From assembly GCF_031769215.1 (NCBI RefSeq), contig NW_026782164.1:62001-126000 (forward strand): a stretch of 64,000 nucleotides of DNA, in the 5' to 3' direction. Shown piece by piece: positions 4,227 to 46,600 of the stretch (its first letter is position 1; each line of letters starts with the position of its first letter). This stretch comes from Ylistrum balloti. Its lineage: Eukaryota. A program made the translations under genes and the position numbers. The notes under the pieces were generated by a model that was given only the letters and a program-made list of their open reading frames with translations, was not told where the DNA came from and did not search any database.

Positions 4227-5642
4227 ACTGCCCTATGTTATTGTGTATTACCCACACAGTGTTATATAATACTGCCCTGTGTTACTCTATGTTACAGTGT
4301 TATATAATACTGCCCTGTGTTACTCTATGTTACAGTGTTATATAATACTGCCCTGTGTTACTCTATGTTTCACTGTTATATAATACTGCCCTGTGTTACT
4401 CTATGTTTCAGTGTTATATAATACTGCCCTGTGTTACTCTATGTTTCACTGTTATATAATACTGCCCTGTGTTACTCTATGTTTCACTGTTATATAATAC
4501 TGCCCTGTGTTACTCTATGTTTCACTGTTATATAATACTGCCCTGTGTTACTCTATGTTTCAGTGTTATATAATACTGCCCTGTGTTACTCTATGTTTCA
4601 CTGTTATATAATACTGCCCTGTGTTACTCTATGTTTCACTGTTATATAATACTGCCCTGTGTTACTCTATGTTACAGTGTTATATAATACTGCCCTGTGT
4701 TACTCTATGTTACAGTGTTATATAATACTGCCCTGTGTTACTCTATGTTACAGTGTTATATAATACTGCCCTGTGTTACTCTATGTTACAGTGTTATATA
4801 ATACTGGCCTGTGTTTCTCTATGTTACAGTGTTATATAATACTGCCCTGTGTTACTCTATGTTACAGTGTTATATAATACTGCCCTGTGTTACTCTATGT
4901 TACACTGTTATATAATACTGCCCTGTGTTACTCTATGTTACAGTGTTATATAATACTGCCCTGTGTTACTCTATGTTTCACTGTTATATAATACTGCCCT
5001 GTGTTACTCTATGTTACAGTGTTATATAATACTGGCCTGTGTTTCTCTATGTTACAGTGTTATATAATACTGCCCTGTGTTACTCTATGTTTCACTGTTA
5101 TATAATACTGCCCTGTGTTACTCTATGTTTCAGTGTTATATAATACTGCCCTGTGTTACTCTATGTTTCACTGTTATATAATACTGCCCTGTGTTACTCT
5201 ATGTTTCACTGTTATATAATACTGCCCTGTGTTACTCTATGTTACAGTGTTATATAATACTGCCCTGTGTTACTCTATGTTACAGTGTTATATAATACTG
5301 CCCTGTGTTACTCTATGTTACAGTGTTATATAATACTGCCCTGTGTTACTCTATGTTACAGTGTTATATAATACTGGCCTGTGTTTCTCTATGTTACAGT
5401 GTTATATAATACTGCCCTGTGTTACTCTATGTTACAGTGTTATATAATACTGCCCTGTGTTACTCTATGTTACACTGTTATATAATACTGCCCTGTGTTA
5501 CTCTATGTTACAGTGTTATATAATACTGCCCTGTGTTACTCTATGTTTCACTGTTATATAATACTGCCCTGTGTTACTCTATGTTACAGTGTTATATAAT
5601 ACTGCCCTGTGTTTCTCGATGTTACAGTGTTATATAATACAG
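4227..5642. repeat. 38-bp minisatellite, ~37 copies (CTGCCCTGTGTTACTCTATGTTACAGTGTTATATAATA)
   Basis: Direct reading; variant units recur at a 570-bp period. Confidence 0.97.
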
Positions 5643-5689
5643 TCCTGTATTGTTTCATTTTTGCCTTATTTACATGTACATCGTGATCG

Positions 5690-7055
5690 AGCTGTAATTT
5701 TTATCATAGCAATGTTAATACCTATACTTTTGTTCTGATGACAGCTAGCCTAGCTAATTGAAACATGTACATACCATATATATCTTTGGTACCATACCAA
5801 TTGCTGGTATGGTCCATCCTGATCACCAACTGTATCCAATTCCAGACATCCAACAATTACTGATACTACTGTCAACGTTATCACCTGTATGTCAGACGAG
5901 AATTTGGCTCATTTATCAGCGTGTAGAATTTATATGTAAATCTATGTGATATAGGCATTTGTAATTAAGTCACGGATGAGTCGTAATTTTTAACCTTAGC
6001 TATGTAAATATTTATACCATTGTTCTGATGATGGCTAGCCTAATTAGCCGAAACGTGTAAACTAATGATAAAACCACGGAATCCAGATGTAGATGCTCCA
6101 TCTTCTATGTCAGTTGTATTTACCTCCCTTGATGGAGCTCTATTGAATACTGTTGGGTATCGATCTTTGATTCATTTATGATGTAATCATCGACAGAAGA
6201 CAACTAGAATGTTCGTTTCTCTCCCATTCCAGTAGGAGTTTTTTTATTTTCTGTTGTACCCTTGGGAGAACCCCTGCATCCTTCACTTGAACTGTCCAAT
6301 GCTATACAGTGCCATACTATATGGCCAATCACAGTTTATCCATTCTAAACATATTCTCAATACAACACCAATTGCTGAAAGACACCAATCCCAAAAAGGC
6401 CATAATGAACCTATCACAATCTGAATCCAACTCAAGAAATCCAACAATTTTGGTAACTACTATCACTACCTACGTTTCCACCTGAATATCAGACGAGGAT
6501 GTGGCTCATTTTCGAGCATGCATAATTTATATATAAACTCAGTCAATGTAACTTAACTAATAATATCACAACTGTACTGCCATTAGCACATGACAGTTGT
6601 TATTACGTGTATATCAGGAAAGAGCCATAATTTTAATCCATGTAAATATCTTTACCTTTGTTCTGATGATGGCTTGTCTAGCTAGCCGAAATATTTACAT
6701 ACCATACATATTTTTTGTACCATATCAATTGTTGGTATGGACCAACCCGATCACCAACTGTATCCAACTCCAGAATCCAACCATTACAGATACTACTACT
6801 ACCAACACTATCACCCGAATGTTGGACGAGAATGTGACTGATTTTCGAGCATGCAGAAATTTATATGTTATCTCTGTCAATGTAACTTAATGATAATGGC
6901 ACTATTGTATTGTCATTGCCATGTGATATAGACATTTGTAATTATGTCACGGATGAGTAAATGTTTATACCATTGTTCTGATGACGGCTAGCCTAATTAG
7001 CCGAAACGTGTAAAAACACGAAATCCAGATGTGGATGCTCCATCTTCTATGTCAT
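5690..7055 (+). ncRNA. Tandem ~300-nt repeats delimited by four minimal hammerhead ribozyme motifs (retrozyme or Penelope pLTR-like)
   Basis: CTGATGA-N-stem II-GAAA cores at 5735, 6025, 6663 and 6978. Copy 2 has stem II GGCTA/TAGCC, stem III ACGTGT, a GUA triplet and a 7-bp stem I. Confidence 0.7.
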
Positions 7056-8294
7056 TTTTCTTAACCAGCTTGTTTTATCATTTGAATGCTGCAAAAATGA
7101 AGAGGACACTCATTTCTGTATATGCATAGTTACCAAGGATTTGGTTCTGAATTACTTTATAAACATGAAATTCATTCTTTGTCCATCACATAACCCTTTC
7201 AGGACATACAGCTTTTATACATTCATACCTTGAGAAATGTTCCTAATCTTGTGACATTAATTTATTGTTATAATCACTATCACAACTAACATCATAATTA
7301 GCAATCCTAGTTTTAATTAGTTCATTATAAGATATATGTAACTGTTGGTACTGATCAACATATCTTCTTGACGCACTTCAAGGAAAAAAACATTGTAGTG
7401 TGTACACAGGGGTGGATGATCATGTATATTGATTAACTCCACATCCGACTACTGTGCTAAGCTGTTGGTGTTATTAATATATTGTTACCTGTGTATGAAA
7501 TGATAAATAGAGATGGAGATACAACTGTATAAAGAGATATACGCGGCAATATGATACCTATATATTGACCAGCTATCAAAGGAATCAAACGCACAGGCGA
7601 TCACAGCAAACATTATTGGAAAATGTGTGCGCTGGTTAAATTTTGTAATGTTGTGCAGGACTATTGGTGAGGGAGTAATGGAGGATTAAGGGAGGAAAAA
7701 TGTCCACAGAATGTTTCATCTGTTTGAGAATTAAGGTTTGATGGAAATTTGTGATGTTGTGTCTTTAAAGTGAAGCACCTGAATCAGGTCAATATGGACA
7801 GTACTGTTAATCATTTGGTGGCAGATGATTTTGATGTGATTATGCGGGTTAGAGTTGACGATGGAAAAGTTTGGTATGTTTGACGGTTAAAAAGTAATAA
7901 CATGTCATTTACATGATAATATTGGTTCATCATAAAAACATCCTCTTTATACTGGTTCTTCAATTTAGGGCCTCAATCTTTTTGTAATCTTTTACATATT
8001 AGAGAACTGAACTTTGCTTAGTATTCATCAGATCATGTATATGATATGATGGTAGTTCAACATAGTTCAGTGTTGGATGGAACATTTGTTATTTCTATGT
8101 AGTAACACAACATGGTGTCACTGCCCATAAAATTACGTTTATAATGATAATTTTTGTTAATTTATCTTATTCACTGTGTAAAAAAAAGGTGGCCAATAAT
8201 TTTGATTTAGCATATATGGAGAATATGCATACTATTGTCAGTGGAATAGGTGAGTAGATTAATTTACTGATTGACAGCTAGCAGAATACATAAA

Positions 8295-8478
8295 TGTAAT
8301 AAAAATAAAAGGGGTCTATTTGTCTTTATGTAACTCTGGTATATACCAGCTGCAATATACCCCTTGGCTTAAGAGAACTTTTCTTTAGCTTGATTGGATG
8401 AGCATCAGCCTAGTAAGCCAGGGTTCCCGGGTTTGATTCCTAGTGGAGGCATTGAATTAAATAATGACCTCTATTACA
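8295..8478 (+). mobile_element. Probable solo LTR with internal tRNA-like sequence (TRIM/Helenus-like)
   Basis: Begins TGTAATA and ends TATTACA; internal TAGCTTGATTGGATGAGC...CTAGTAA...GGTTTGATTCC; flanks taaa/tata. Confidence 0.5.
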
Positions 8479-8643: not shown

Positions 8644-10318
8644 TGTTGGGTATTGCATGGCTGGTGATGTTGGGTATTGCAAAGTTGGTGATGTGGGGTA
8701 TTGCATGGTTGGTGATGTTGGGTATTGCATGGTTGGTGATGTTGGGTATTGCATGGTTGGTGATGTTGGGTATTGCATGGTTGGGGTGATGTTGGGTATT
8801 GCATGGTTGGTGATGTTGGGTGTTGCATGGTTGGTGATGTTGGGTATTGCGTGGTTGGTGATGTTGGGTATTGCATGGTTGGTGATGTTGGGTATTGCAT
8901 GGTTGGTGCTGTTGGGTGTTGCATGGTTGATGATGTTGGGTATTGCATGGTTGGTGATGTTGGGTGTTGCATGGTTGGGGTGATGTTGGGTATTGCATGG
9001 TTGGTGATGTTGGGTGTTGCATGGTTGGGGTGATGTTGGGTGTTGCATGGTTGGTGATGTTGGGTATTGCATGGTTAGTGATGTTGGGTATTGCATGGTT
9101 GGTGATGTTTGGTATTACATGGTTGGTGGTGTTGGGTATTGCATGGTTGGGGTGATGTTGGGTATTGCATGGTTGGTGATGTTGGGTATTGTTTGGTTGG
9201 TGATGTTGGGTATTGCATGGTTGGTGATGTTGGGTGTTGCATGGTTGGGGTGATGTTGGGTATTGCATGGTTGGTGATGTGGGGTATTGCATGGTTGGTG
9301 ATGTTGGGTATTGCATAGTTGGTGATGTTGGGTATTGCATGGGGGGTTGGGTGTTGCATGGTTGGGGTGATGTTGGGTATTGCATGGTTGGTGATGTTGG
9401 GTATTGCATGGTCGGTGATGTTGGGTGTTGCATGGTTGGTGATGTTGGGTATTGCATGGTTAGTGATGTTGGGTATTGCATGGTTGGTGATGTTTGGTAT
9501 TGCATGGTTGGTGATGTTGGGTATTGTTTGGTTGGTGATGTTGGGTATTGCATGGTTGGTGATGTTGGGTGTTGCATGGTTGGGGTGATGTTGGGTATTG
9601 CATGGTTGGTGATGTTGGGTATTGCATGGTTGGGGTGATGTTGGGTATTGCATGGTTGGTGCTGTTGGGTATTGCATGGTTGGTGATGTTGGGTATTGCA
9701 TGGTTGGTGATGTTGGGTATTGCATAGTTGGTGATGTTGGGTATTGCATGGGGGGGTTGGTTATTGCATGGTTGGGGTGATGTTGGGTATTGCATGGTTG
9801 GTGATGTTGGGTATTGCATGGTCGGTGATGTTGGGTGTTGCATGGTTGGTGATGTTGGGTATTGCATGGTTAGTGATGTTGGGTATTGCATGGTTGGTGA
9901 TGTTTGGTATTGCATGGTTGGTGATGTTGGGTATTGTTTGGTTGGTGATGTTGGGTATTGCATGGTTGGTGATGTTGGGTGTTGCATGGTTGGGGTGATG
10001 TTGGGTATTGCATGGTTGGTGATGTTGGGTATTGCATGGTTGGGGTGATGTTGGATATTGCATGGTTGGTGCTGTTGGGTATTGCATGGTTGGTGATGTT
10101 GGGTATTGTTTGGTTGGTGATGTTGGGTATTGCATGGTTGGTGGTGTTGGGTGTTGCATGGTTGGGGTGATGTTGGGTATTGCATGGTTGGTGATGTTGG
10201 GTATTGCATGGTTGGGGTGATGTTGGGTATTGCATGGTTGGTGATGTTGGGTATTGTTTGGTTGGTGCTGTTGGGTATTGCATGGTTGGTGATGTTGGGT
10301 ATTGCATGGTTGGTGATT
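8644..10318. repeat. 24-bp GT-rich minisatellite, ~69 copies (TTGGTGATGTTGGGTATTGCATGG)
   Basis: Direct reading; source of all repetitive ORFs at 8606-10351. Confidence 0.98.
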
Positions 10319-25612: not shown

Positions 25613-28600
25613 GTAAGTATGACCTATTTGTACATCTAGATCCTGCAGTTAATTGATTCTTATCGAACATGTAGGAATAGGGCTCACTGTCATCAGAATT
25701 TTTATCTATGTTTACTTTGAAGTGTTTAACAATCTCATTTTTTTGTCATTGTACATGTATTGATTTACATGATGCTATAAATGTTCAGTTATATTTTGAT
25801 TAAAGATGAGAGAAACCATCAACATTAGCATATATAATTGATTTTCAAATAGTTTTGTTATGCAATCTGATTTTGATATATGGTATAGGAGACTTAGTCA
25901 TGATTACAGGGGCTTTAAAATTTTCTAAAGTTTTAATTTTATTTAGAAGTCCTTTTCATTTTGATTCAATTTTAACTCTTGATCACATGCTTTCACAGAG
26001 TGACATAATTAGAGGGATCTAGCAGAATAATCTTGTTAATTAAAGGTCAGCATTAAGTCTTAATTAAGATTTTGATGGTAGCAATTAATCTGGTGTGTTA
26101 ACAGTTTTATGAAATTTTAATAAATAACAAAATAACTTCTTTTTTCAAAGAATCATTTAGGATTTACCTGACCTATTTTACAAATGAATTATTCTTCAAA
26201 AGTCTCATAGCTCAATGCCACTTTACCACAAAGAACTTTTTGCAGAGATCCTTTGAGTTTGTAAATACTATACTTAACAACAGTATGCATGTGTGGGCTT
26301 ATCACCAGACATCGGCTTAATACTGAATAAATCGGGTAAAAGATATAGAAAAAAAGCTGGTTTTTATGTTGAGCTTAGGTCATCAAATCACGCAAAGAAT
26401 CTTAAAACAAAGTTGTATGACATGTTGAAGATAACAGATATATTGACAATAGGATGGTCTCACTATTTCTGAAGCAATCCTGGACACAGAGCCACTTATA
26501 TTGTGTAGTGAATTCTGATATTTTCTAATGTCTCTATTCATTGTCAGAGCTTATTTTGACACATCTGTCACTACCACCAGTGGGGATATATAATGTGTTG
26601 AACTATATACAATCTATTCAGTATCAGTGTTGGTATGTAGGAATTAACATCCAATCAACCTTAAAGAAAATAGATTGAAAAAGAAGCCCCATTAAGCCTT
26701 AACCATTATCTTAGACATGTTTTATAAAGTCATCAGTGTTTAAGTAATGTTTATCAGACATTTCTCATAGAAATATCTCTATTATGCCTTCATTTGTGTT
26801 ATATTATGTGTTTTAGTATAAATACATTAAAACATCTAAAGCTATTAACCTCAAATGAAACAGATGCAATGTAATTTAACTTTGTAATGTAATTTGAGAA
26901 AAGGAATTAAATGAAATCTCTTTATCTAAACTGATACTTGAAAAGGTATTGATAATTCCACAGCATTACTTGGTGTGATTAAGGAATATCTGTGACTCCA
27001 TACCTCTGTAACATTTAGGACATATTATTAGCTCATAGTTGACACAAATTCAAGGCATATTTCTTGACAGTATCACAATTATTAAAAAGAAAATGTTTAT
27101 GTTTGATCTTCTTATTTTCATTTGATATGATTAAAACTATAACAGTTTTGATACTCTGGAATCACATATTATTGCAGGGCTAAATTTTCATGGCTGTAAA
27201 AAAAGTCATTGTTTTCTAATGGACAGCTGGTTATATGGATAAGTATAGCTCAGTAAATGTTCTTATTGTAATTTGAACAGTCAGTAGATATATGAATTCA
27301 TAGAATAAGAGTGCCTGTGAAATCAACAAAAATTCCTGATTTTTTCGGTAGTATAACAGTGTTGTTGATAGCAGCTGGTTACGATCCACCAACATAACAA
27401 AGATATTGACTCTAGTATGAACTTTTGTTTAAGGATTAAAGAAAATAGAGAAATAGTAAACTCCAACATACACATATGTTAGTTCTTATGGAGATTTTTC
27501 CATCTTGGAGATTTTTCTTTGCTGGTTTTCTGAAAACAAGTAAAGCAGTGACATAGTATTTTATATAATAATCAGTTAAAAAGGGGGTTGATATTTAACT
27601 GAGCACAAGTGACCAGCACAATCCAGTTTGTTGAAGAGGTGTGAATATTTCAAGTCTATTGATCCTGCTATACAAGGCATGATAGGTTGTAAACAGTTAA
27701 TTAATAAATCAATAACCTATTATAATTATGTCATGAAATCTGAATAAGGCCCAGAAATTGTTTAATTACCAGAGAGACACCTGTTGTGATAGGAGGCACA
27801 AGCTTGAAATGTCTCGTATTGATAAGAATACTTTTAATTAAACTTACTGATTTATTTAGCCAATCAGACTCCTCAGATTTTTTTTAACATTTCAAAATGC
27901 GGAACAAAAACTGTAAAACTTTATTCTAATTACTGATAAGAAAGAATTGCATTAGTTCTCTGACTAATAAAGTTTGTACTAACAGAAGCTTAATTTCAGT
28001 CTCTAAATTGTAACTGTGTGGATGAATATATGTTGGTGAAAGAAAAGGACAGTTGAGAAAGCATATGAATGGTCATCTTTCAGCAGTAAACTGCGGAGAG
28101 AATCAATGTTTGTATCAACCTTTCAACCTCCATTCCATTCTGTCAATAAATTTCTGCATTTTGGAAAACAATTAACCACCATACAAATGGCCCACATTGA
28201 ACACACCCTTCTGTAGACAACGTGATGAACACTATATTAGACTGCTCGGCACTGTTGCGCCATATGGCTGCAATGACGGCCTGACTCTGTAAGAAATTTG
28301 TCCTGTCCTGGATGTAGTAACACTAACGTTTTGGCTTTATTCACTCATAAACCTAGAGGAAATCTTAGACATAGGCTATATATGAAATCTAGCAATATAC
28401 CGTCATGTTTGAAAATCTAATTGCGTTACAAAAACCACTAGGTGTTCATCATGTTCGAACTATGTTATATTTGCTTCCTCTCTCTGCTTCTAGTGGATTC
28501 AGCTAATACTGCTTCTGGTGACAAGTGGAAACTAGCTTGGAGACTTGATAAAATTATTGATGATGTGACATAAACCTCTTTAAACCTATCCATACAGATG

Positions 28601-43600: not shown

Positions 43601-46600
43601 TACAAATAAACAGCTCGGATACAGAACCATAATGTTATCTCTAGTATCAAGAACAGAAAAAAACAGTACATGTTCTCCATCTAATACAGAATTAACTTTA
43701 CATTAATCTATTAAGTAAATTTATATTTTAATCTCAAACATAGATAAATACATATGGTCAACAATATAAATAGGAAGAAAATTATAGTCTTTATTATCAA
43801 CACTTGTGTTGTGTGTCAAGAAAATACCAACATGGCAACATAATCATAATTCAAGCTCAAATTCCATAAAACTAGGGCAAATATGAACAAATCAAAGATT
43901 TACATGGAGACTCCTGAAAAAGTACAAGGATAATAAGAACAGATGGTACAGAGGAGTAAGCATCTTCTGCTTAATGGATGACACCCGCCATGTAAACCTT
44001 GGTCAATCCAAGTAAGTAATGTCAGGTTCTCAAATGAGAACAAGGTATACAAGAACAGAACCAACTGGCAAACTTATGAGCACGAAATACGTACAGCTAT
44101 ATGTAGCACAAAAAAAAAGCATATTTCACAATGAGATCACTATGGCAACTACAAAACCTTACCCATAATTTTCATCCTGCATCTTTTGAAGCATTATGTT
44201 ATGAGTTTGTCTGTCAGTTGATGACTTCTTGCATGAAAATCATGATAATGGGAACAGACCATTGAATATTGAATCAACTGTGACATGTAAATACCATAAG
44301 TTGGAGATGCAGGGCTATTGCAATCCAGAAATGGAAAATTCACAATAGGGAAATTAAAATCATTATGTTAATCATACAGTTGGTGGAAAGCTGTCCATGT
44401 TGGTTTCCTTGCAGGAAAAGATCGAGATAAGCAGCTGATGTAGATGAATCTGGTGTATCTTTGATTTCATGTTCTGGTTGAAAAACACAATGGACGTAGT
44501 CAATAAATTTCTTGCTATCAAAAGACAAGAAATCATCAATATATCTGAAAGTGAAATTAAACGACTTTGCAAGGTCTTTGTAACCTATTTTGATAAGCTC
44601 TTCAATAAATTCAGCCTTGTATGAGAACAGAAACAAGTCAGCCAACAGAGGGGTTCAGTTTGTTCCCATAGGTATGCCATTAGTCTGTTGGAAGATCTTA
44701 CCACCAAACCTGATGAAGATGTTGTTAACCAGAAACTCACTATAAACATATATAGCTGAGTCTGTTAGAAGATCTAAGGTGTATGGTTCATCACTCCTTA
44801 CCTGTGGTGATTTGGTAGCCCTCACTAACTTCAATAGGGAGGCTATAGATCTACAGGTAAAAAAGGCGGGGCATTCATGAACAAACTAATCAACAAGTAA
44901 GAAACACATCTGTGATGTAAAAGTAACACATGTTTTCTACAATATCAAATTGTACATATCAACTTTAAAACACTTCATGATGTTCTATCAAGTTTCTGAT
45001 GACACTTCAAAGATACATTGATTTAACACTGTGACAGAGCTGCAATGATCCAACACATGTGCACTTGCTTTTAAAGTCTACTTTCATGTGATAAAATTTC
45101 AGCTGAGGTATAAATATTTGAACAGAGTATAATAATGTTAAAGCTGTGCTTTGTTACAAATCAGTGAATGAACTGTAGACTTTTTTTTAGTTGTTTGCAG
45201 ATAGCTAGCCGAAGCTTTTAAAGTGTATTTCAAAAACAAGGAGATTGCATCATTGTATGAAATCCATTCAACAGGAACTTTCTATGTGTGAAAGTTAATT
45301 TGTTCTACTCCTGACAGTCCACAGGGTGAAACAGTCAGAACTGTGGTTTTCTGTGTTTTGTGTTAACTGATCGAATGATGTTTTGACATATACACAGAAA
45401 AAGAAATCTTCATGAAAAATGTGTTACGTTTACTTACAACTTTGACGATCAAACCGTTTCAGTTCGGTTACTTGATCTGATTACTGGAGGGGACCACTTG
45501 CTATAGCTTAACGTTCTGTTGTGTGAAGTTTTGCTGAGGTCATGTTGTCAAATCAAAAAAAAGGCAATGCTATCTATATCTAGAGTCGTTTGGTTTTGAA
45601 ATCAAACAGATGTAATGAGAAGACCTAAAATACCAAAATGAATATCATTTTGTATAGAGTCAAAACAGTTTTATGATTTGGGTTATGGCAATATGAACTT
45701 TGAAACAGCTATTGTCAGCTTCTCAGTCTTCTATACATCGCAGTGGTCAACAGGATGAAAATTGAAAAAGGAAGGAGGAATGAAAAATGTCTCGTCCCAA
45801 TTTTGGCCAAAAATTGGTTCAGAATACATATATGTATGTTCTTTTGTAATTATCACATATGAGGATGTATGAAAATTAAGAAATTCAGTGAATTATGGGG
45901 CTGGGTCACCTACCGATCTTGATTTTGATCTCTTTATATAATGGCATCTGTTTTATAATTACCAGATTGATTAGTGTCTCAACTTTTATATTTCTATAAT
46001 GATAAGTTGGACTGAAAAGCCAATATTGAAATATTGTGAAATTTCTAAGATGGGATAGCATTGCATTGTACCTCTGACTTCTAGCATTTTGAACCTGGGA
46101 TGGGAAAGGAATTGGAACTTGATAAAGCCCAGAGAAGCCATAACTTTTGTCTCTGTCTTACGATGTGTTTACTCGTTATCTTCAGACATGCATATCCTCA
46201 GAGCTTAACAGTATATCATTCAGAAAAAGCAATCTAGATCATGTCTGTGTTTGGGCCTTGTCTGTATTTATTGTTTTTCAAGTCAATCAGCTGACCTAGA
46301 CTGGACCCTAATCCTTATGAAATAGTTTTGATATACAAATTTGATTGAAAATGACATTATTACACATAATACATGTTGTTTACTTTTTCTCCTATTTCCA
46401 TTGTCCTGCAATACACATAACTGATACTTCAATGATAAAACTTAAATCTCATTCAATTTCATTTTATTGTCACAGCAATGCCCCATGTTATCTTGCTGCA
46501 GACATTTTACCTGCTAAGTCGATTATGAGAACTGAGTGAAGAGGGAGAAATTTTAAGCCAATTTCAATAAGAAGAAGTGTTGTATGATCAGTCATTTCAA

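What the first reader, a model, noticed from the sequence alone, without database searches (positions are those of the whole stretch)
5690..7055. Four minimal hammerhead ribozyme motifs delimiting ~300-nt repeats (retrozyme-like) on the channel's sense strand
Seen: CTGATGA cores at 5735, 6025, 6663 and 6978, each followed by one extra base, a stem II hairpin (GGCTA-gcctaat-TAGCC in copies 2 and 4) and GAAA. A 6-nt stem III follows (ACATGT palindrome in copy 1; ACGTGT, self-pairing with G-U, in copies 2 and 4), then the cleavage nucleotide A. Copy 2 also closes stem I (CATTGTT 6018-6024 with AAC-t-AATG 6060-6067). The spacers 5770-6059 (290 nt) and 6698-7012 (315 nt) are homologous, and a third decayed unit lies at ~6330-6600. 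Established: minimal type I hammerheads with palindromic stem III act as dimers and occur in Penelope-like pLTRs and in tandem non-coding retrozymes that yield small circular RNAs in metazoans. Inference: a partly decayed retrozyme family; if it lies inside the KCNT primary transcript, it could cleave the pre-mRNA co-transcriptionally.
Basis: partly seen in the sequence, partly recalled or inferred. Interest (0 to 1): 0.75.

Follow-up and report, generated by a model that had tools for sequence, protein, structure and literature searches.

The report
Decayed Penelope-type hammerhead repeat insertion
The four hammerhead ribozyme motifs are real, but they belong to an old, worn insertion of a common non-coding mobile repeat that copies itself with the help of Penelope-like retrotransposons, and only one motif still has all its parts, so this is ordinary for this scallop genome.

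Summary
Four co-oriented 58-nt blocks with a CUGAUGA...GAAA core lie at 5735, 6025, 6663 and 6978. A model built only from 18 hammerheads elsewhere in this genome finds exactly these four (38.5-47.9 bits; next best 15.2).

They are the minimal hammerhead type of Penelope-like elements (PLEs): an extra base after A9, a G10.1-C11.1 pair, a long helix II, a short helix I and a palindromic ACAUGU helix III. Helices I and II covary across genomic families.

The carrier is a dispersed repeat with no reverse transcriptase nearby: at least 55 copies at 67-85% identity, variable 5' ends, and two fixed 3' ends about 55 or 190 nt past the cut site. That is the PLE insertion signature.

The retrozyme-like hammerhead-to-hammerhead tandem is rare: 5 such junctions against 70 hammerhead-tail junctions. 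The upstream hammerhead of each tandem lacks helix I.

In the window only copy 2 (6025) is complete. Copy 4 lost helix I by deletion; copies 1 and 3 are damaged.

The KCNT1-like gene is on the same strand, but its first exon was not located, and no RNA run exists. Cleavage of the pre-mRNA is unlikely.

This scan reached a like verdict before on other DNA of this genome.

The parts
5670..7066 (+). Whole composite insertion of the hammerhead-bearing repeat. It is either one cDNA of about 1.5 master repeats or two adjacent insertions (5670-6257 and 6262-7066).
   Evidence: Homology to genomic copies starts at 5666-5672 and ends at 7054-7066. The two halves are collinear at 73%. GC is 35.5-36.5%.
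5721..5784 (+). Hammerhead 1 (core 5735-5769), 'a-type' and damaged. The 10.1-11.1 pair is A-U, the 3' strand of helix II reads GCTAATT, and there is no helix I because the next unit starts directly after the cut site.
   Evidence: R1 score 45.7 bits; MFE fold lacks helix I.
5770..6059 (+). Short unit 1 (290 nt): spacer plus hammerhead 2.
   Evidence: fold z-score 0.04.
6011..6074 (+). Hammerhead 2 (core 6025-6059), the only complete copy. It has CUGAUGA-U, helix II GGCUA/UAGCC with a 7-nt loop, GAAA, helix III ACGUGU, H17 = A6059, and helix I CAUUGUU (6018-6024) with AAC-u-AAUG (6060-6067).
   Evidence: R1 score 47.9 bits; the monomer MFE forms helices I and II.
6060..6254 (+). Long 'tail' (about 190 nt) after the cut site. 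It ends in the hairpin CTCCCA..TAGGAG plus a T-run, and this is the fixed 3' end of one class of genomic copies.
   Evidence: About 14 loci end at the window equivalent of 6242-6254, followed by unrelated flanks.
6262..6340 (+). 'Head' segment that precedes the spacer in the longest copies.
   Evidence: Shared with L004, L008, L010/L020, L014 and L050 at 75-83%.
6341..6640 (+). Third spacer unit (decayed), which follows the head rather than a hammerhead.
   Evidence: (D3, D5, D7).
6649..6710 (+). Hammerhead 3 (core 6663-6697), 'a-type' and damaged. It reads GAAAUAUUUA, so C15.2 and the palindrome are lost. Helix II has a U-U mismatch, and there is no helix I.
   Evidence: R1 score 39.6 bits.
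6698..7012 (+). Short unit 2 (315 nt): spacer plus hammerhead 4.
   Evidence: fold z-score -0.63.
6964..7027 (+). Hammerhead 4 (core 6978-7012). Core and helix II are intact. An 11-nt deletion relative to copy 2 removed the 3' strand of helix I, and CGUGU-AAAA-ACACG now forms a competing hairpin.
   Evidence: Alignment; fold; R1 score 38.5 bits.
7013..7066 (+). Short 'tail' (about 55 nt), which ends at the second fixed 3' end class.
   Evidence: 88% identity to 6069-6124 (D6). About 20 genomic copies end at the window equivalent of 6110-6123, followed by unrelated flanks.

Best explanation
Positions 5670-7066 hold an old, partly decayed insertion (one event or two adjacent ones) of a non-autonomous retroelement. 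Its 3' module imitates the junction region of Penelope-like elements (PLEs): about 300 nt of spacer, a PLE-type minimal hammerhead, then a 'tail'.

Inferred mechanism. A master array is transcribed. A PLE reverse transcriptase supplied in trans starts copying inside the tail, at about +55 or +190 from the hammerhead cut site. It copies back through the hammerhead and spacer and often stops early. This leaves a fixed 3' end and variable 5' ends.

The hammerhead is a selected part of the active element, as helices I and II covary among families. In this locus it is a relic. Only copy 2 keeps the core and helices I and II. As a minimal hammerhead it would need a partner for helix III, and probably the PLE protein, to cut.

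Shown: the motifs, the family, the covariation, the end classes and the damage per copy. Inferred: mobilisation by PLEs, and the lack of present function.
For: Motif class. All published hallmarks of PLE minimal hammerheads (PMC4209133) are present in the family's sequence (GGCTAGC-CTA-GCTAGCC): a nucleotide between A9 and 10.1, G10.1-C11.1, a 7-bp helix II, a short helix I and palindromic ACAUGU. Loci of this genome with GIY-YIG endonuclease frames carry the same architecture about 800 nt 3' of the endonuclease, for example ttgtc-CTGATGA-c-GGCCGC..GCGGTC-GAAACATGTA-gacaa.

Abundance.
- CTGATGAN{12,24}GAAACATGT gives 158 hits against 6 in the control.
- Model R1 gives at least 150 genomic hits, which is the scoring cap.

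Covariation. On 20 sequences, 82% of cells pair against 20-50% when the partners are slid. There are 37 double-sided changes against 5-21, and 0 of 500 shuffles reach the observed value. Helix I alternates between GUU/AAC, GUC/GAC and GCC/GGC.

Family. There are at least 55 and at least 53 matches at 67-87% identity. No RT or EN open frame lies within 1.5 kb of 78 loci, and the neighbouring frames are host genes.

PLE-type architecture.
- The 5' starts vary.
- There are two 3' end classes, matching the 'tail' produced by internal initiation (PMC11167929; PMC8557442).
- Adjacent inverted copies occur at 8 or more loci.

Damage per copy. Intact genomic copies score 55-75 bits against 38-48 bits here.
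Against: - No autonomous PLE was found that shares spacer or tail sequence with this family. BLAST against 12 endonuclease loci gave nothing, so the partner is inferred only from the shared ribozyme architecture and insertion signature.
- No RNA data exist, so neither silence nor expression is shown.
- The sequences for the covariation test were picked by eye from a pattern list. This favours helix II; helix I was not visible when they were picked.
- Whether the composite is one insertion or two is unresolved. Blocks 2 and 4 share private changes (97% over 58 nt), while the rest is 73% identical.
Confidence: 0.8

Rival explanations
1. This is a live non-LTR retrozyme. Tandem units would be transcribed (possibly within the KCNT pre-mRNA), cut at successive hammerheads, ligated into 290-315-nt circles, and could truncate the channel transcript.
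For: - The spacing of 290 and 315 nt and the GC of 36% fit published non-LTR retrozymes (PMC7229834).
- The motifs are on the same strand as the KCNT1-like gene.
- Copy 2 is structurally complete.
Against: - Hammerheads 1 and 3 lack helix I and carry core or helix damage, and hammerhead 4 lost helix I. No unit is therefore flanked by two competent ribozymes.
- The tandem junction is rare genome-wide, 5 against 70.
- The ribozyme is the minimal PLE type, not the canonical type with loop-loop contacts that defines published retrozymes.
- The units are not unusually self-paired.
- Minimal hammerheads cleave poorly in vitro, and no cleaved ends were seen in vivo for the lizard element PAc.
- The locus scores at the low end of the family.
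Confidence: 0.07
2. The carrier belongs to another repeat class that merely captured a Penelope hammerhead. Candidates are a Pol III SINE, or a Helitron- or MITE-borne short tandem repeat as seen in bivalves. It would move by that other machinery.
For: - The long tail ends in a hairpin plus a T-run, which resembles a Pol III terminator or a Helitron 3' hairpin.
- Many copies adjoin minisatellites.
- No sequence link to an autonomous PLE was found.
Against: - There is no tRNA-like head.
- The 5' ends vary and the 3' ends are fixed, as in target-primed reverse transcription.
- Adjacent inverted copies and a tail after the hammerhead are PLE signatures.
- No CTRR end or terminal inverted repeats were seen by eye in the end alignments.
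Confidence: 0.08
3. The hammerhead likeness is a chance resemblance inside an ordinary tandem repeat.
For: Rfam finds no hammerhead, either at gathering score or at E up to 10.
Against: - The pattern counts are far above the controls: 4 against 0.24, 14 against 0, and 158 against 6.
- An independent model recovers exactly the four copies.
- Helices I and II show compensatory changes.
- Rfam's type I model expects a helix III hairpin, which minimal hammerheads lack by design.
Confidence: 0.01

Closest known systems
Minimal hammerheads of Penelope-like elements (Cervera and de la Pena 2014, PMC4209133; dimer-acting small variants)
   Same: - The CUGAUGA/GAAA core.
- An unpaired base between A9 and 10.1.
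- The G10.1-C11.1 pair.
- A 7-bp helix II and a short helix I.
- No helix III hairpin, but a palindromic ACAUGU that can pair only between two copies.
- Many covarying families in one genome.
- The same design sits 3' of GIY-YIG frames in this genome.
   Different: Here the motif sits in a non-coding repeat with no RT or EN within 1.5 kb. Three of the four window copies are damaged. Activity was not tested.
Metazoan non-LTR retrozymes (Cervera and de la Pena 2020, PMC7229834; Li et al. 2026 preprint 10.64898/2026.07.22.740005)
   Same: - Non-coding units of about 300 nt with low GC.
- Units sometimes lie head-to-tail with a type I hammerhead each.
- They coexist with PLEs. The 2026 preprint derives vertebrate retrozymes from PLE pLTRs.
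- Bivalves are a known host: the mussel has about 5000 copies.
   Different: - Published retrozymes carry canonical hammerheads and form dimers up to long multimers that yield circles.
- Here the usual copy has a single hammerhead plus a tail.
- The tandem is rare (5 against 70), and its upstream ribozyme lacks helix I.
- The units are not strongly self-paired.
- No circular RNA evidence exists.
PLE insertion 'tail' from internal initiation of reverse transcription (Frangieh et al. 2024, PMC11167929; Craig et al. 2021, PMC8557442)
   Same: - A fixed 3' end lies a set distance downstream of the hammerhead, close to a C/A-rich stem-loop.
- The 5' ends are truncated at variable points.
- Copies form partial tandems and adjacent inverted copies.
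   Different: There are two end classes here (about 55 and 190 nt), against a 30-40-bp tail in the 2021 survey. The element is non-autonomous. The initiation site is inferred from genomic ends only.
Conserved intronic hammerheads of amniotes (HH9/HH10; from my own knowledge, not read here)
   Same: A hammerhead on the sense strand near or within a host gene.
   Different: The amniote motifs are single, canonical and ultraconserved. This one is a decaying transposon copy with no sign of host selection.

Membership tests
PLE-type minimal hammerhead | Catalytic core CUGANGA ... GAAA, with H17 not G | tested here: met
   All four copies have CUGAUGA and GAAA, and H17 is A. Genomic relatives have H17 = A, C or U, never G.
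PLE-type minimal hammerhead | Unpaired nucleotide between A9 and 10.1 | tested here: met
   C or U in all four copies and in all 20 aligned genomic motifs.
PLE-type minimal hammerhead | G10.1-C11.1 pair closing a long helix II (6-8 bp) | tested here: met
   The family form is GGCUAGC/GCUAGCC, 7 bp. Copies 2 and 4 keep 5 bp with G-C. Copy 3 keeps G-C with one mismatch. Copy 1 has A-U at this position, so it fails.
PLE-type minimal hammerhead | Palindromic 15.1-16.1 segment with no helix III hairpin (dimer design) | tested here: met
   ACAUGU in copy 1 and in the family. ACGUGU (two G-U pairs in a dimer) in copies 2 and 4. The palindrome is lost in copy 3, which reads AUAUUU. Other families of this genome use ACUAGU and ACCGGU.
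PLE-type minimal hammerhead | Short helix I formed by the bases just 5' of C3 and just 3' of the cut | tested here: inconclusive
   Met in copy 2 only (GUU/AAC plus CAUU/AAUG). Absent in copies 1 and 3, where the next unit follows the cut. Deleted in copy 4. Present in 70 genomic 'b-type' copies.
PLE-type minimal hammerhead | Compensatory changes in the helices among copies | tested here: met
   82% of cells pair against 20-50% when the partners are slid, and 9 of 12 pairs show double-sided changes.
PLE-type minimal hammerhead | Self-cleavage (as a dimer, or with the element's protein) | not testable with these tools
   This needs in vitro transcription. The only public run that holds the locus is genomic DNA.
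PLE-type minimal hammerhead | Location in the pLTR of an element that encodes RT plus GIY-YIG | tested here: not met
   No RT or EN frame lies within 1.5 kb of 78 family loci. Autonomous PLE loci carry a related motif but no alignable flanks. The carrier is therefore non-autonomous.
Non-LTR retrozyme | Tandem repeats of 150-450 bp, each with a hammerhead | tested here: inconclusive
   The form is present here (290 and 315 nt). It is rare in the family, with 5 tandem junctions against 70 hammerhead-tail junctions.
Non-LTR retrozyme | Canonical type I hammerhead with loop 1-loop 2 contacts and a helix III hairpin | tested here: not met
   The ribozyme is the minimal type. No Rfam Hammerhead hit appears even at E up to 10.
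Non-LTR retrozyme | Each monomer bounded by two cleavage-competent ribozymes | tested here: not met
   The upstream hammerhead of each pair has no helix I.
Non-LTR retrozyme | Low GC; non-coding; no LTR, PBS or PPT | tested here: met
   GC is 36%. There is no tRNA-like sequence. The only open frames over the units are short: 97-98 aa at about 6594-6890 and 58-78 aa elsewhere. They were not run against protein families. LTR, PBS and PPT were not searched for specifically.
Non-LTR retrozyme | Highly self-paired monomer RNA expressed as circles | tested here: not met
   The folding z-scores are 0.04 and -0.63. Circles cannot be tested without RNA runs.
PLE-type insertion architecture | Variable 5' truncation with fixed 3' ends and a tail beyond the hammerhead | tested here: met
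   The 5' starts are scattered. The 3' ends cluster at the window equivalents of 6110-6123 (about 20 loci) and 6242-6254 (about 14 loci), each followed by unrelated flanks.
PLE-type insertion architecture | Partial tandems and adjacent inverted copies | tested here: met
   Partial tandems occur here and at C1052, C885, C289, C330 and C111. Plus/minus pairs within a few hundred bp occur on C136, C793, C741, C13, C226, C380, C1052 and C249.

The most novel reading that the evidence does not exclude
The two alternative continuations of the element part exactly, within 1-2 nt, at the predicted scissile bond. One reads ...GAAACAUGUA|AACYAAUG (the tail, where helix I forms). The other reads ...GAAACAUGUA|CAUACCAU (the start of the next spacer, which in long copies is instead preceded by the 'head').

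This could be a DNA fossil of ribozyme cleavage in vivo. A cut RNA 3' end would have been joined to another RNA 5' end, by template switching of the reverse transcriptase or by ligation, before being copied into DNA. That would be genomic evidence that Penelope-type minimal hammerheads do cut in cells, which direct RNA-seq did not show for the lizard element PAc.

All tandem copies may descend from one event, so the statistics are thin. The chance of a random breakpoint landing within 2 nt of the cut site in a unit of about 630-950 nt is about 0.5-0.8%.
Probability: 0.15. Interest if true: 0.5.

Novelty: new member of a known kind. Interest (0 to 1): 0.2.

Why it matters
It matters little for the locus itself. 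This is one worn copy among hundreds or more, and it gives no sign of shaping the channel gene.

The family has modest value as a worked example. A bivalve non-coding repeat carries the full Penelope 3' module (hammerhead plus tail with two initiation-site classes) without the protein genes. This supports the recent view that animal 'retrozymes' are non-autonomous Penelope derivatives.

The breakpoint at the cut site is a cheap lead for testing whether these weak ribozymes act in vivo.

Tried and rejected
- **Rfam.** A scan at gathering score and at E up to 10 gave no hammerhead. This is explained by the missing helix III hairpin and is not evidence against the motif.
- **RNA evidence.** It is about 10x genomic DNA (uniform 9-11.5 depth over unique flanks), so its 'joints' are other genomic copies, not circles.
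- **Link to an autonomous PLE.** BLAST of 5660-7070 against 12 GIY-YIG loci gave no hit at E<0.01.
- **Open frames around 78 family loci.** They gave only minisatellite translations and host genes: a GIDE/RING E3 ligase and an Alg9-like transferase.
- **Dimer folding.** RNAcofold preferred an extended duplex of the palindromic helix II strands and did not help to judge the dimeric hammerhead.
- **Alternative helix I for a-type copies.** I found only a distal 6-bp A-U stretch across a 13x10 internal loop, by eye, and rejected it.
- **Type III topology.** Rejected, because no hairpin abuts C3 on the 5' side.
- **First coding exon of the channel.** I did not run the large protein search to map it. 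The N-terminus is poorly conserved and the operators marked that search as costly.

Full report
**1. Observation**

Four co-oriented 58-nt blocks lie at 5714-5771, 6004-6061, 6642-6699 and 6957-7014. They are 76-100% alike and spaced 290, 638 and 315 nt. Each holds CTGATGA, one pyrimidine, a hairpin and GAAA.

- The pattern CTGATGAN{8,30}GAAAC occurs 4 times in the window against 0.24 expected. Three of these hits are the motifs; copy 3 reads GAAAT.
- Rfam reports no hammerhead, even at E up to 10. This is expected for a motif without a helix III hairpin.
- I built covariance model R1 from 18 motifs taken elsewhere in the genome, with no window copies. It finds exactly the four blocks at 47.9, 45.7, 39.6 and 38.5 bits. 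The next hit in 64 kb scores 15.2 bits.

**2. What kind of hammerhead**

The family form, seen in intact genomic copies, is CUGAUGA-Y-GGCUAGC-CUA-GCUAGCC-GAAA-CAUGU-H. It has every hallmark that Cervera and de la Pena listed for the minimal hammerheads of Penelope-like elements (PMC4209133):
- a nucleotide between A9 and 10.1;
- a G10.1-C11.1 pair;
- a long helix II and a short helix I;
- a palindromic 15.1-16.1 segment that can form helix III only between two copies.

This genome holds GIY-YIG endonuclease frames with open frames up to 755 aa. Several of these loci carry the same design about 800 nt 3' of the endonuclease. Their helices differ but still pair: GGCCGC/GCGGUC with UUGUC/GACAA, and palindromes ACUAGU and ACCGGU in other families.

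**3. Abundance and covariation**

- CTGATGAN{12,24}GAAACATGT gives 158 hits against 6 for the reversed control.
- Model R1 gives at least 150 genomic hits, which is the scoring cap. Intact copies score 55-75 bits.
- On 20 aligned motifs, 82% of cells in helices I and II pair, against 20-50% when the partners are slid. There are 37 double-sided changes against 5-21, and none of 500 shuffles reaches the observed value.
- Helix I alternates between GUU/AAC, GUC/GAC and GCC/GGC. H17 is A, C or U, never G.
- Caveat: I picked the sequences by eye from the pattern list. This favours helix II; helix I was not visible when I picked them.

**4. The carrier**

The unit 6640-7066 has at least 55 matches in the 648.5-Mb genome at 67-85% identity. 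The stretch after hammerhead 2 has at least 53 matches. No RT or EN frame lies within 1.5 kb of 78 fetched loci, and the neighbouring frames are host genes or minisatellite translations. GC is 36%, and there is no tRNA-like head.

Two continuations follow the predicted cut site.
- **'b-type':** GUA|AACYAAUGAUAAAACC... This is a tail whose first bases form helix I.
- **'a-type':** GUA|CAUACCAUACAU... This is the start of another spacer unit, with no helix I.

Genome-wide, b-type outnumbers a-type 70 to 5. The usual copy is therefore spacer-hammerhead-tail, not a hammerhead-to-hammerhead tandem.

Tails end at two fixed points, each followed by unrelated AT-rich flanks:
- about 20 loci end at the window equivalent of 6110-6123;
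- about 14 loci end at 6242-6254, just after the hairpin CTCCCA..TAGGAG and a T-run.

The 5' starts are scattered. Adjacent inverted copies occur at 8 or more loci.

This is the insertion signature described for Penelope-like elements: partial tandems, inverted 5'-truncated neighbours, and a 'tail'. The tail is explained by reverse transcription that starts inside the RNA, downstream of the hammerhead, near a C/A-rich stem-loop (PMC8557442; PMC11167929).

**5. Anatomy of the window locus**

| Positions | Feature |
|---|---|
| 5670-5769 | last ~60 nt of a spacer plus hammerhead 1 (a-type) |
| 5770-6059 | spacer plus hammerhead 2 (b-type) |
| 6060-6254 | long tail |
| 6262-6340 | 'head' |
| 6341-6697 | spacer plus hammerhead 3 (a-type) |
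| 6698-7012 | spacer plus hammerhead 4 (b-type) |
| 7013-7066 | short tail |

The two halves are collinear at 73%. A locus on contig C1052 is collinear with 5974-6861 across the tail-head joint. This suggests a master array of about 950 nt per repeat and a single long insertion here. Two adjacent insertions are not excluded.

**6. State of each ribozyme**

- **Copy 2** is complete. Its monomer MFE forms helices I and II. Helix III is ACGUGU, which gives two G-U pairs in a dimer.
- **Copy 4** has the same core and helix II. An 11-nt deletion removed the 3' strand of helix I, and a CGUGU-AAAA-ACACG hairpin now competes.
- **Copy 1** has A-U at 10.1-11.1, a damaged helix II and no helix I.
- **Copy 3** reads GAAAUAUUUA and has no helix I.

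The 290- and 315-nt units fold no better than shuffles, with z-scores of 0.04 and -0.63.

**7. Host gene**

- A KCNT1-like channel gene runs on the + strand.
- An exon at about 25.53-25.62 kb matches human KCNT1 residues 85-113.
- The pore exon lies at 50.06-50.36 kb, and RCK exons lie further on.
- The element is on the sense strand, 18.5 kb upstream of the first exon I could recognise.
- The first coding exon and the transcription start were not located, so I cannot say whether the element is transcribed with the gene.
- The only public run that holds the locus is about 10x genomic DNA, so there is no RNA evidence either way.

**8. Mechanism and verdict**

The most likely reading (about 0.8) is a decayed insertion of a non-autonomous, Penelope-dependent repeat. 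In the active element the hammerhead is a selected part. Here it is a relic.

Co-transcriptional cleavage of the channel pre-mRNA is unlikely for four reasons:
- only one copy is complete;
- it needs a partner for helix III;
- published minimal hammerheads cut weakly, or only with the element's protein;
- transcription through the locus is unproven.

The kind is known. Penelope minimal hammerheads were described in 2014, metazoan retrozymes (including a mussel) in 2020, and a 2026 preprint derives retrozymes from Penelope pLTRs. I found no paper on scallop hammerheads in the held library.

Earlier notes of this scan reached a like verdict for another hammerhead in this genome. They name the animal as a scallop, and one note names Ylistrum balloti. 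I did not verify the species.

**9. One lead worth keeping**

The a-type and b-type continuations part at the predicted scissile bond within 1-2 nt. This could be a fossil of cleavage in vivo followed by template switching or ligation. The tandem copies may all stem from one event, so I rate this at about 0.15.

Noticed in passing
window 4256-5648: A 38-nt minisatellite with 36.7 copies and 96% matches. It ends 22 nt before the 5' edge of the hammerhead element. PLEs are reported to prefer repeat targets.
   Followed up: partly
window 8364-8474: This stretch has a depth of about 10,380 against an 11.5 baseline in the genomic DNA run, so it is present in roughly 900 copies. The sequence has a tRNA-like B box (GGTTCCCGGGTTTGATTCC), so it is probably a fragment of a high-copy tRNA-derived SINE.
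   Followed up: no
window 8644-9500 and beyond: A 24-nt minisatellite with at least 35 copies and 90% matches.
   Followed up: no
window 26700-26750 (-): A hammerhead relic, CTGATGAC...AAACATGTC, with helix II deleted. It scores 15.2 bits with model R1. It lies antisense, about 1.1 kb downstream of the KCNT1-like exon at 25.5 kb.
   Followed up: partly
window 44343-44885 (-): Two adjacent open frames with reverse-transcriptase-like motifs by eye ([15 protein letters not shown]). Pfam gives no hit at E up to 0.01. This is probably a retrotransposon relic in the channel gene.
   Followed up: partly
L078 (G000:C101, about 776250-776414) and G000:C53:1138282-1138943: Minisatellites of about 60 nt built from the 3' half of the hammerhead plus the first ~45 nt of the tail. 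The copies are joined at a GATG microhomology.
   Followed up: partly
L018/L034 (G000:C111): A long minisatellite that seems to be derived from the middle of the spacer unit (ACTACT..ATCACC..GACGAG region). It gives 470-480-aa stop-free repeat translations.
   Followed up: no
G000:C422:240415-261997: Five GIY-YIG matches spaced about 5.36 kb apart, four of them in 755-aa open frames. This is a tandem array of an apparently intact Penelope-like element. My simple motif scan found no hammerhead in the one locus fetched (L090).
   Followed up: partly
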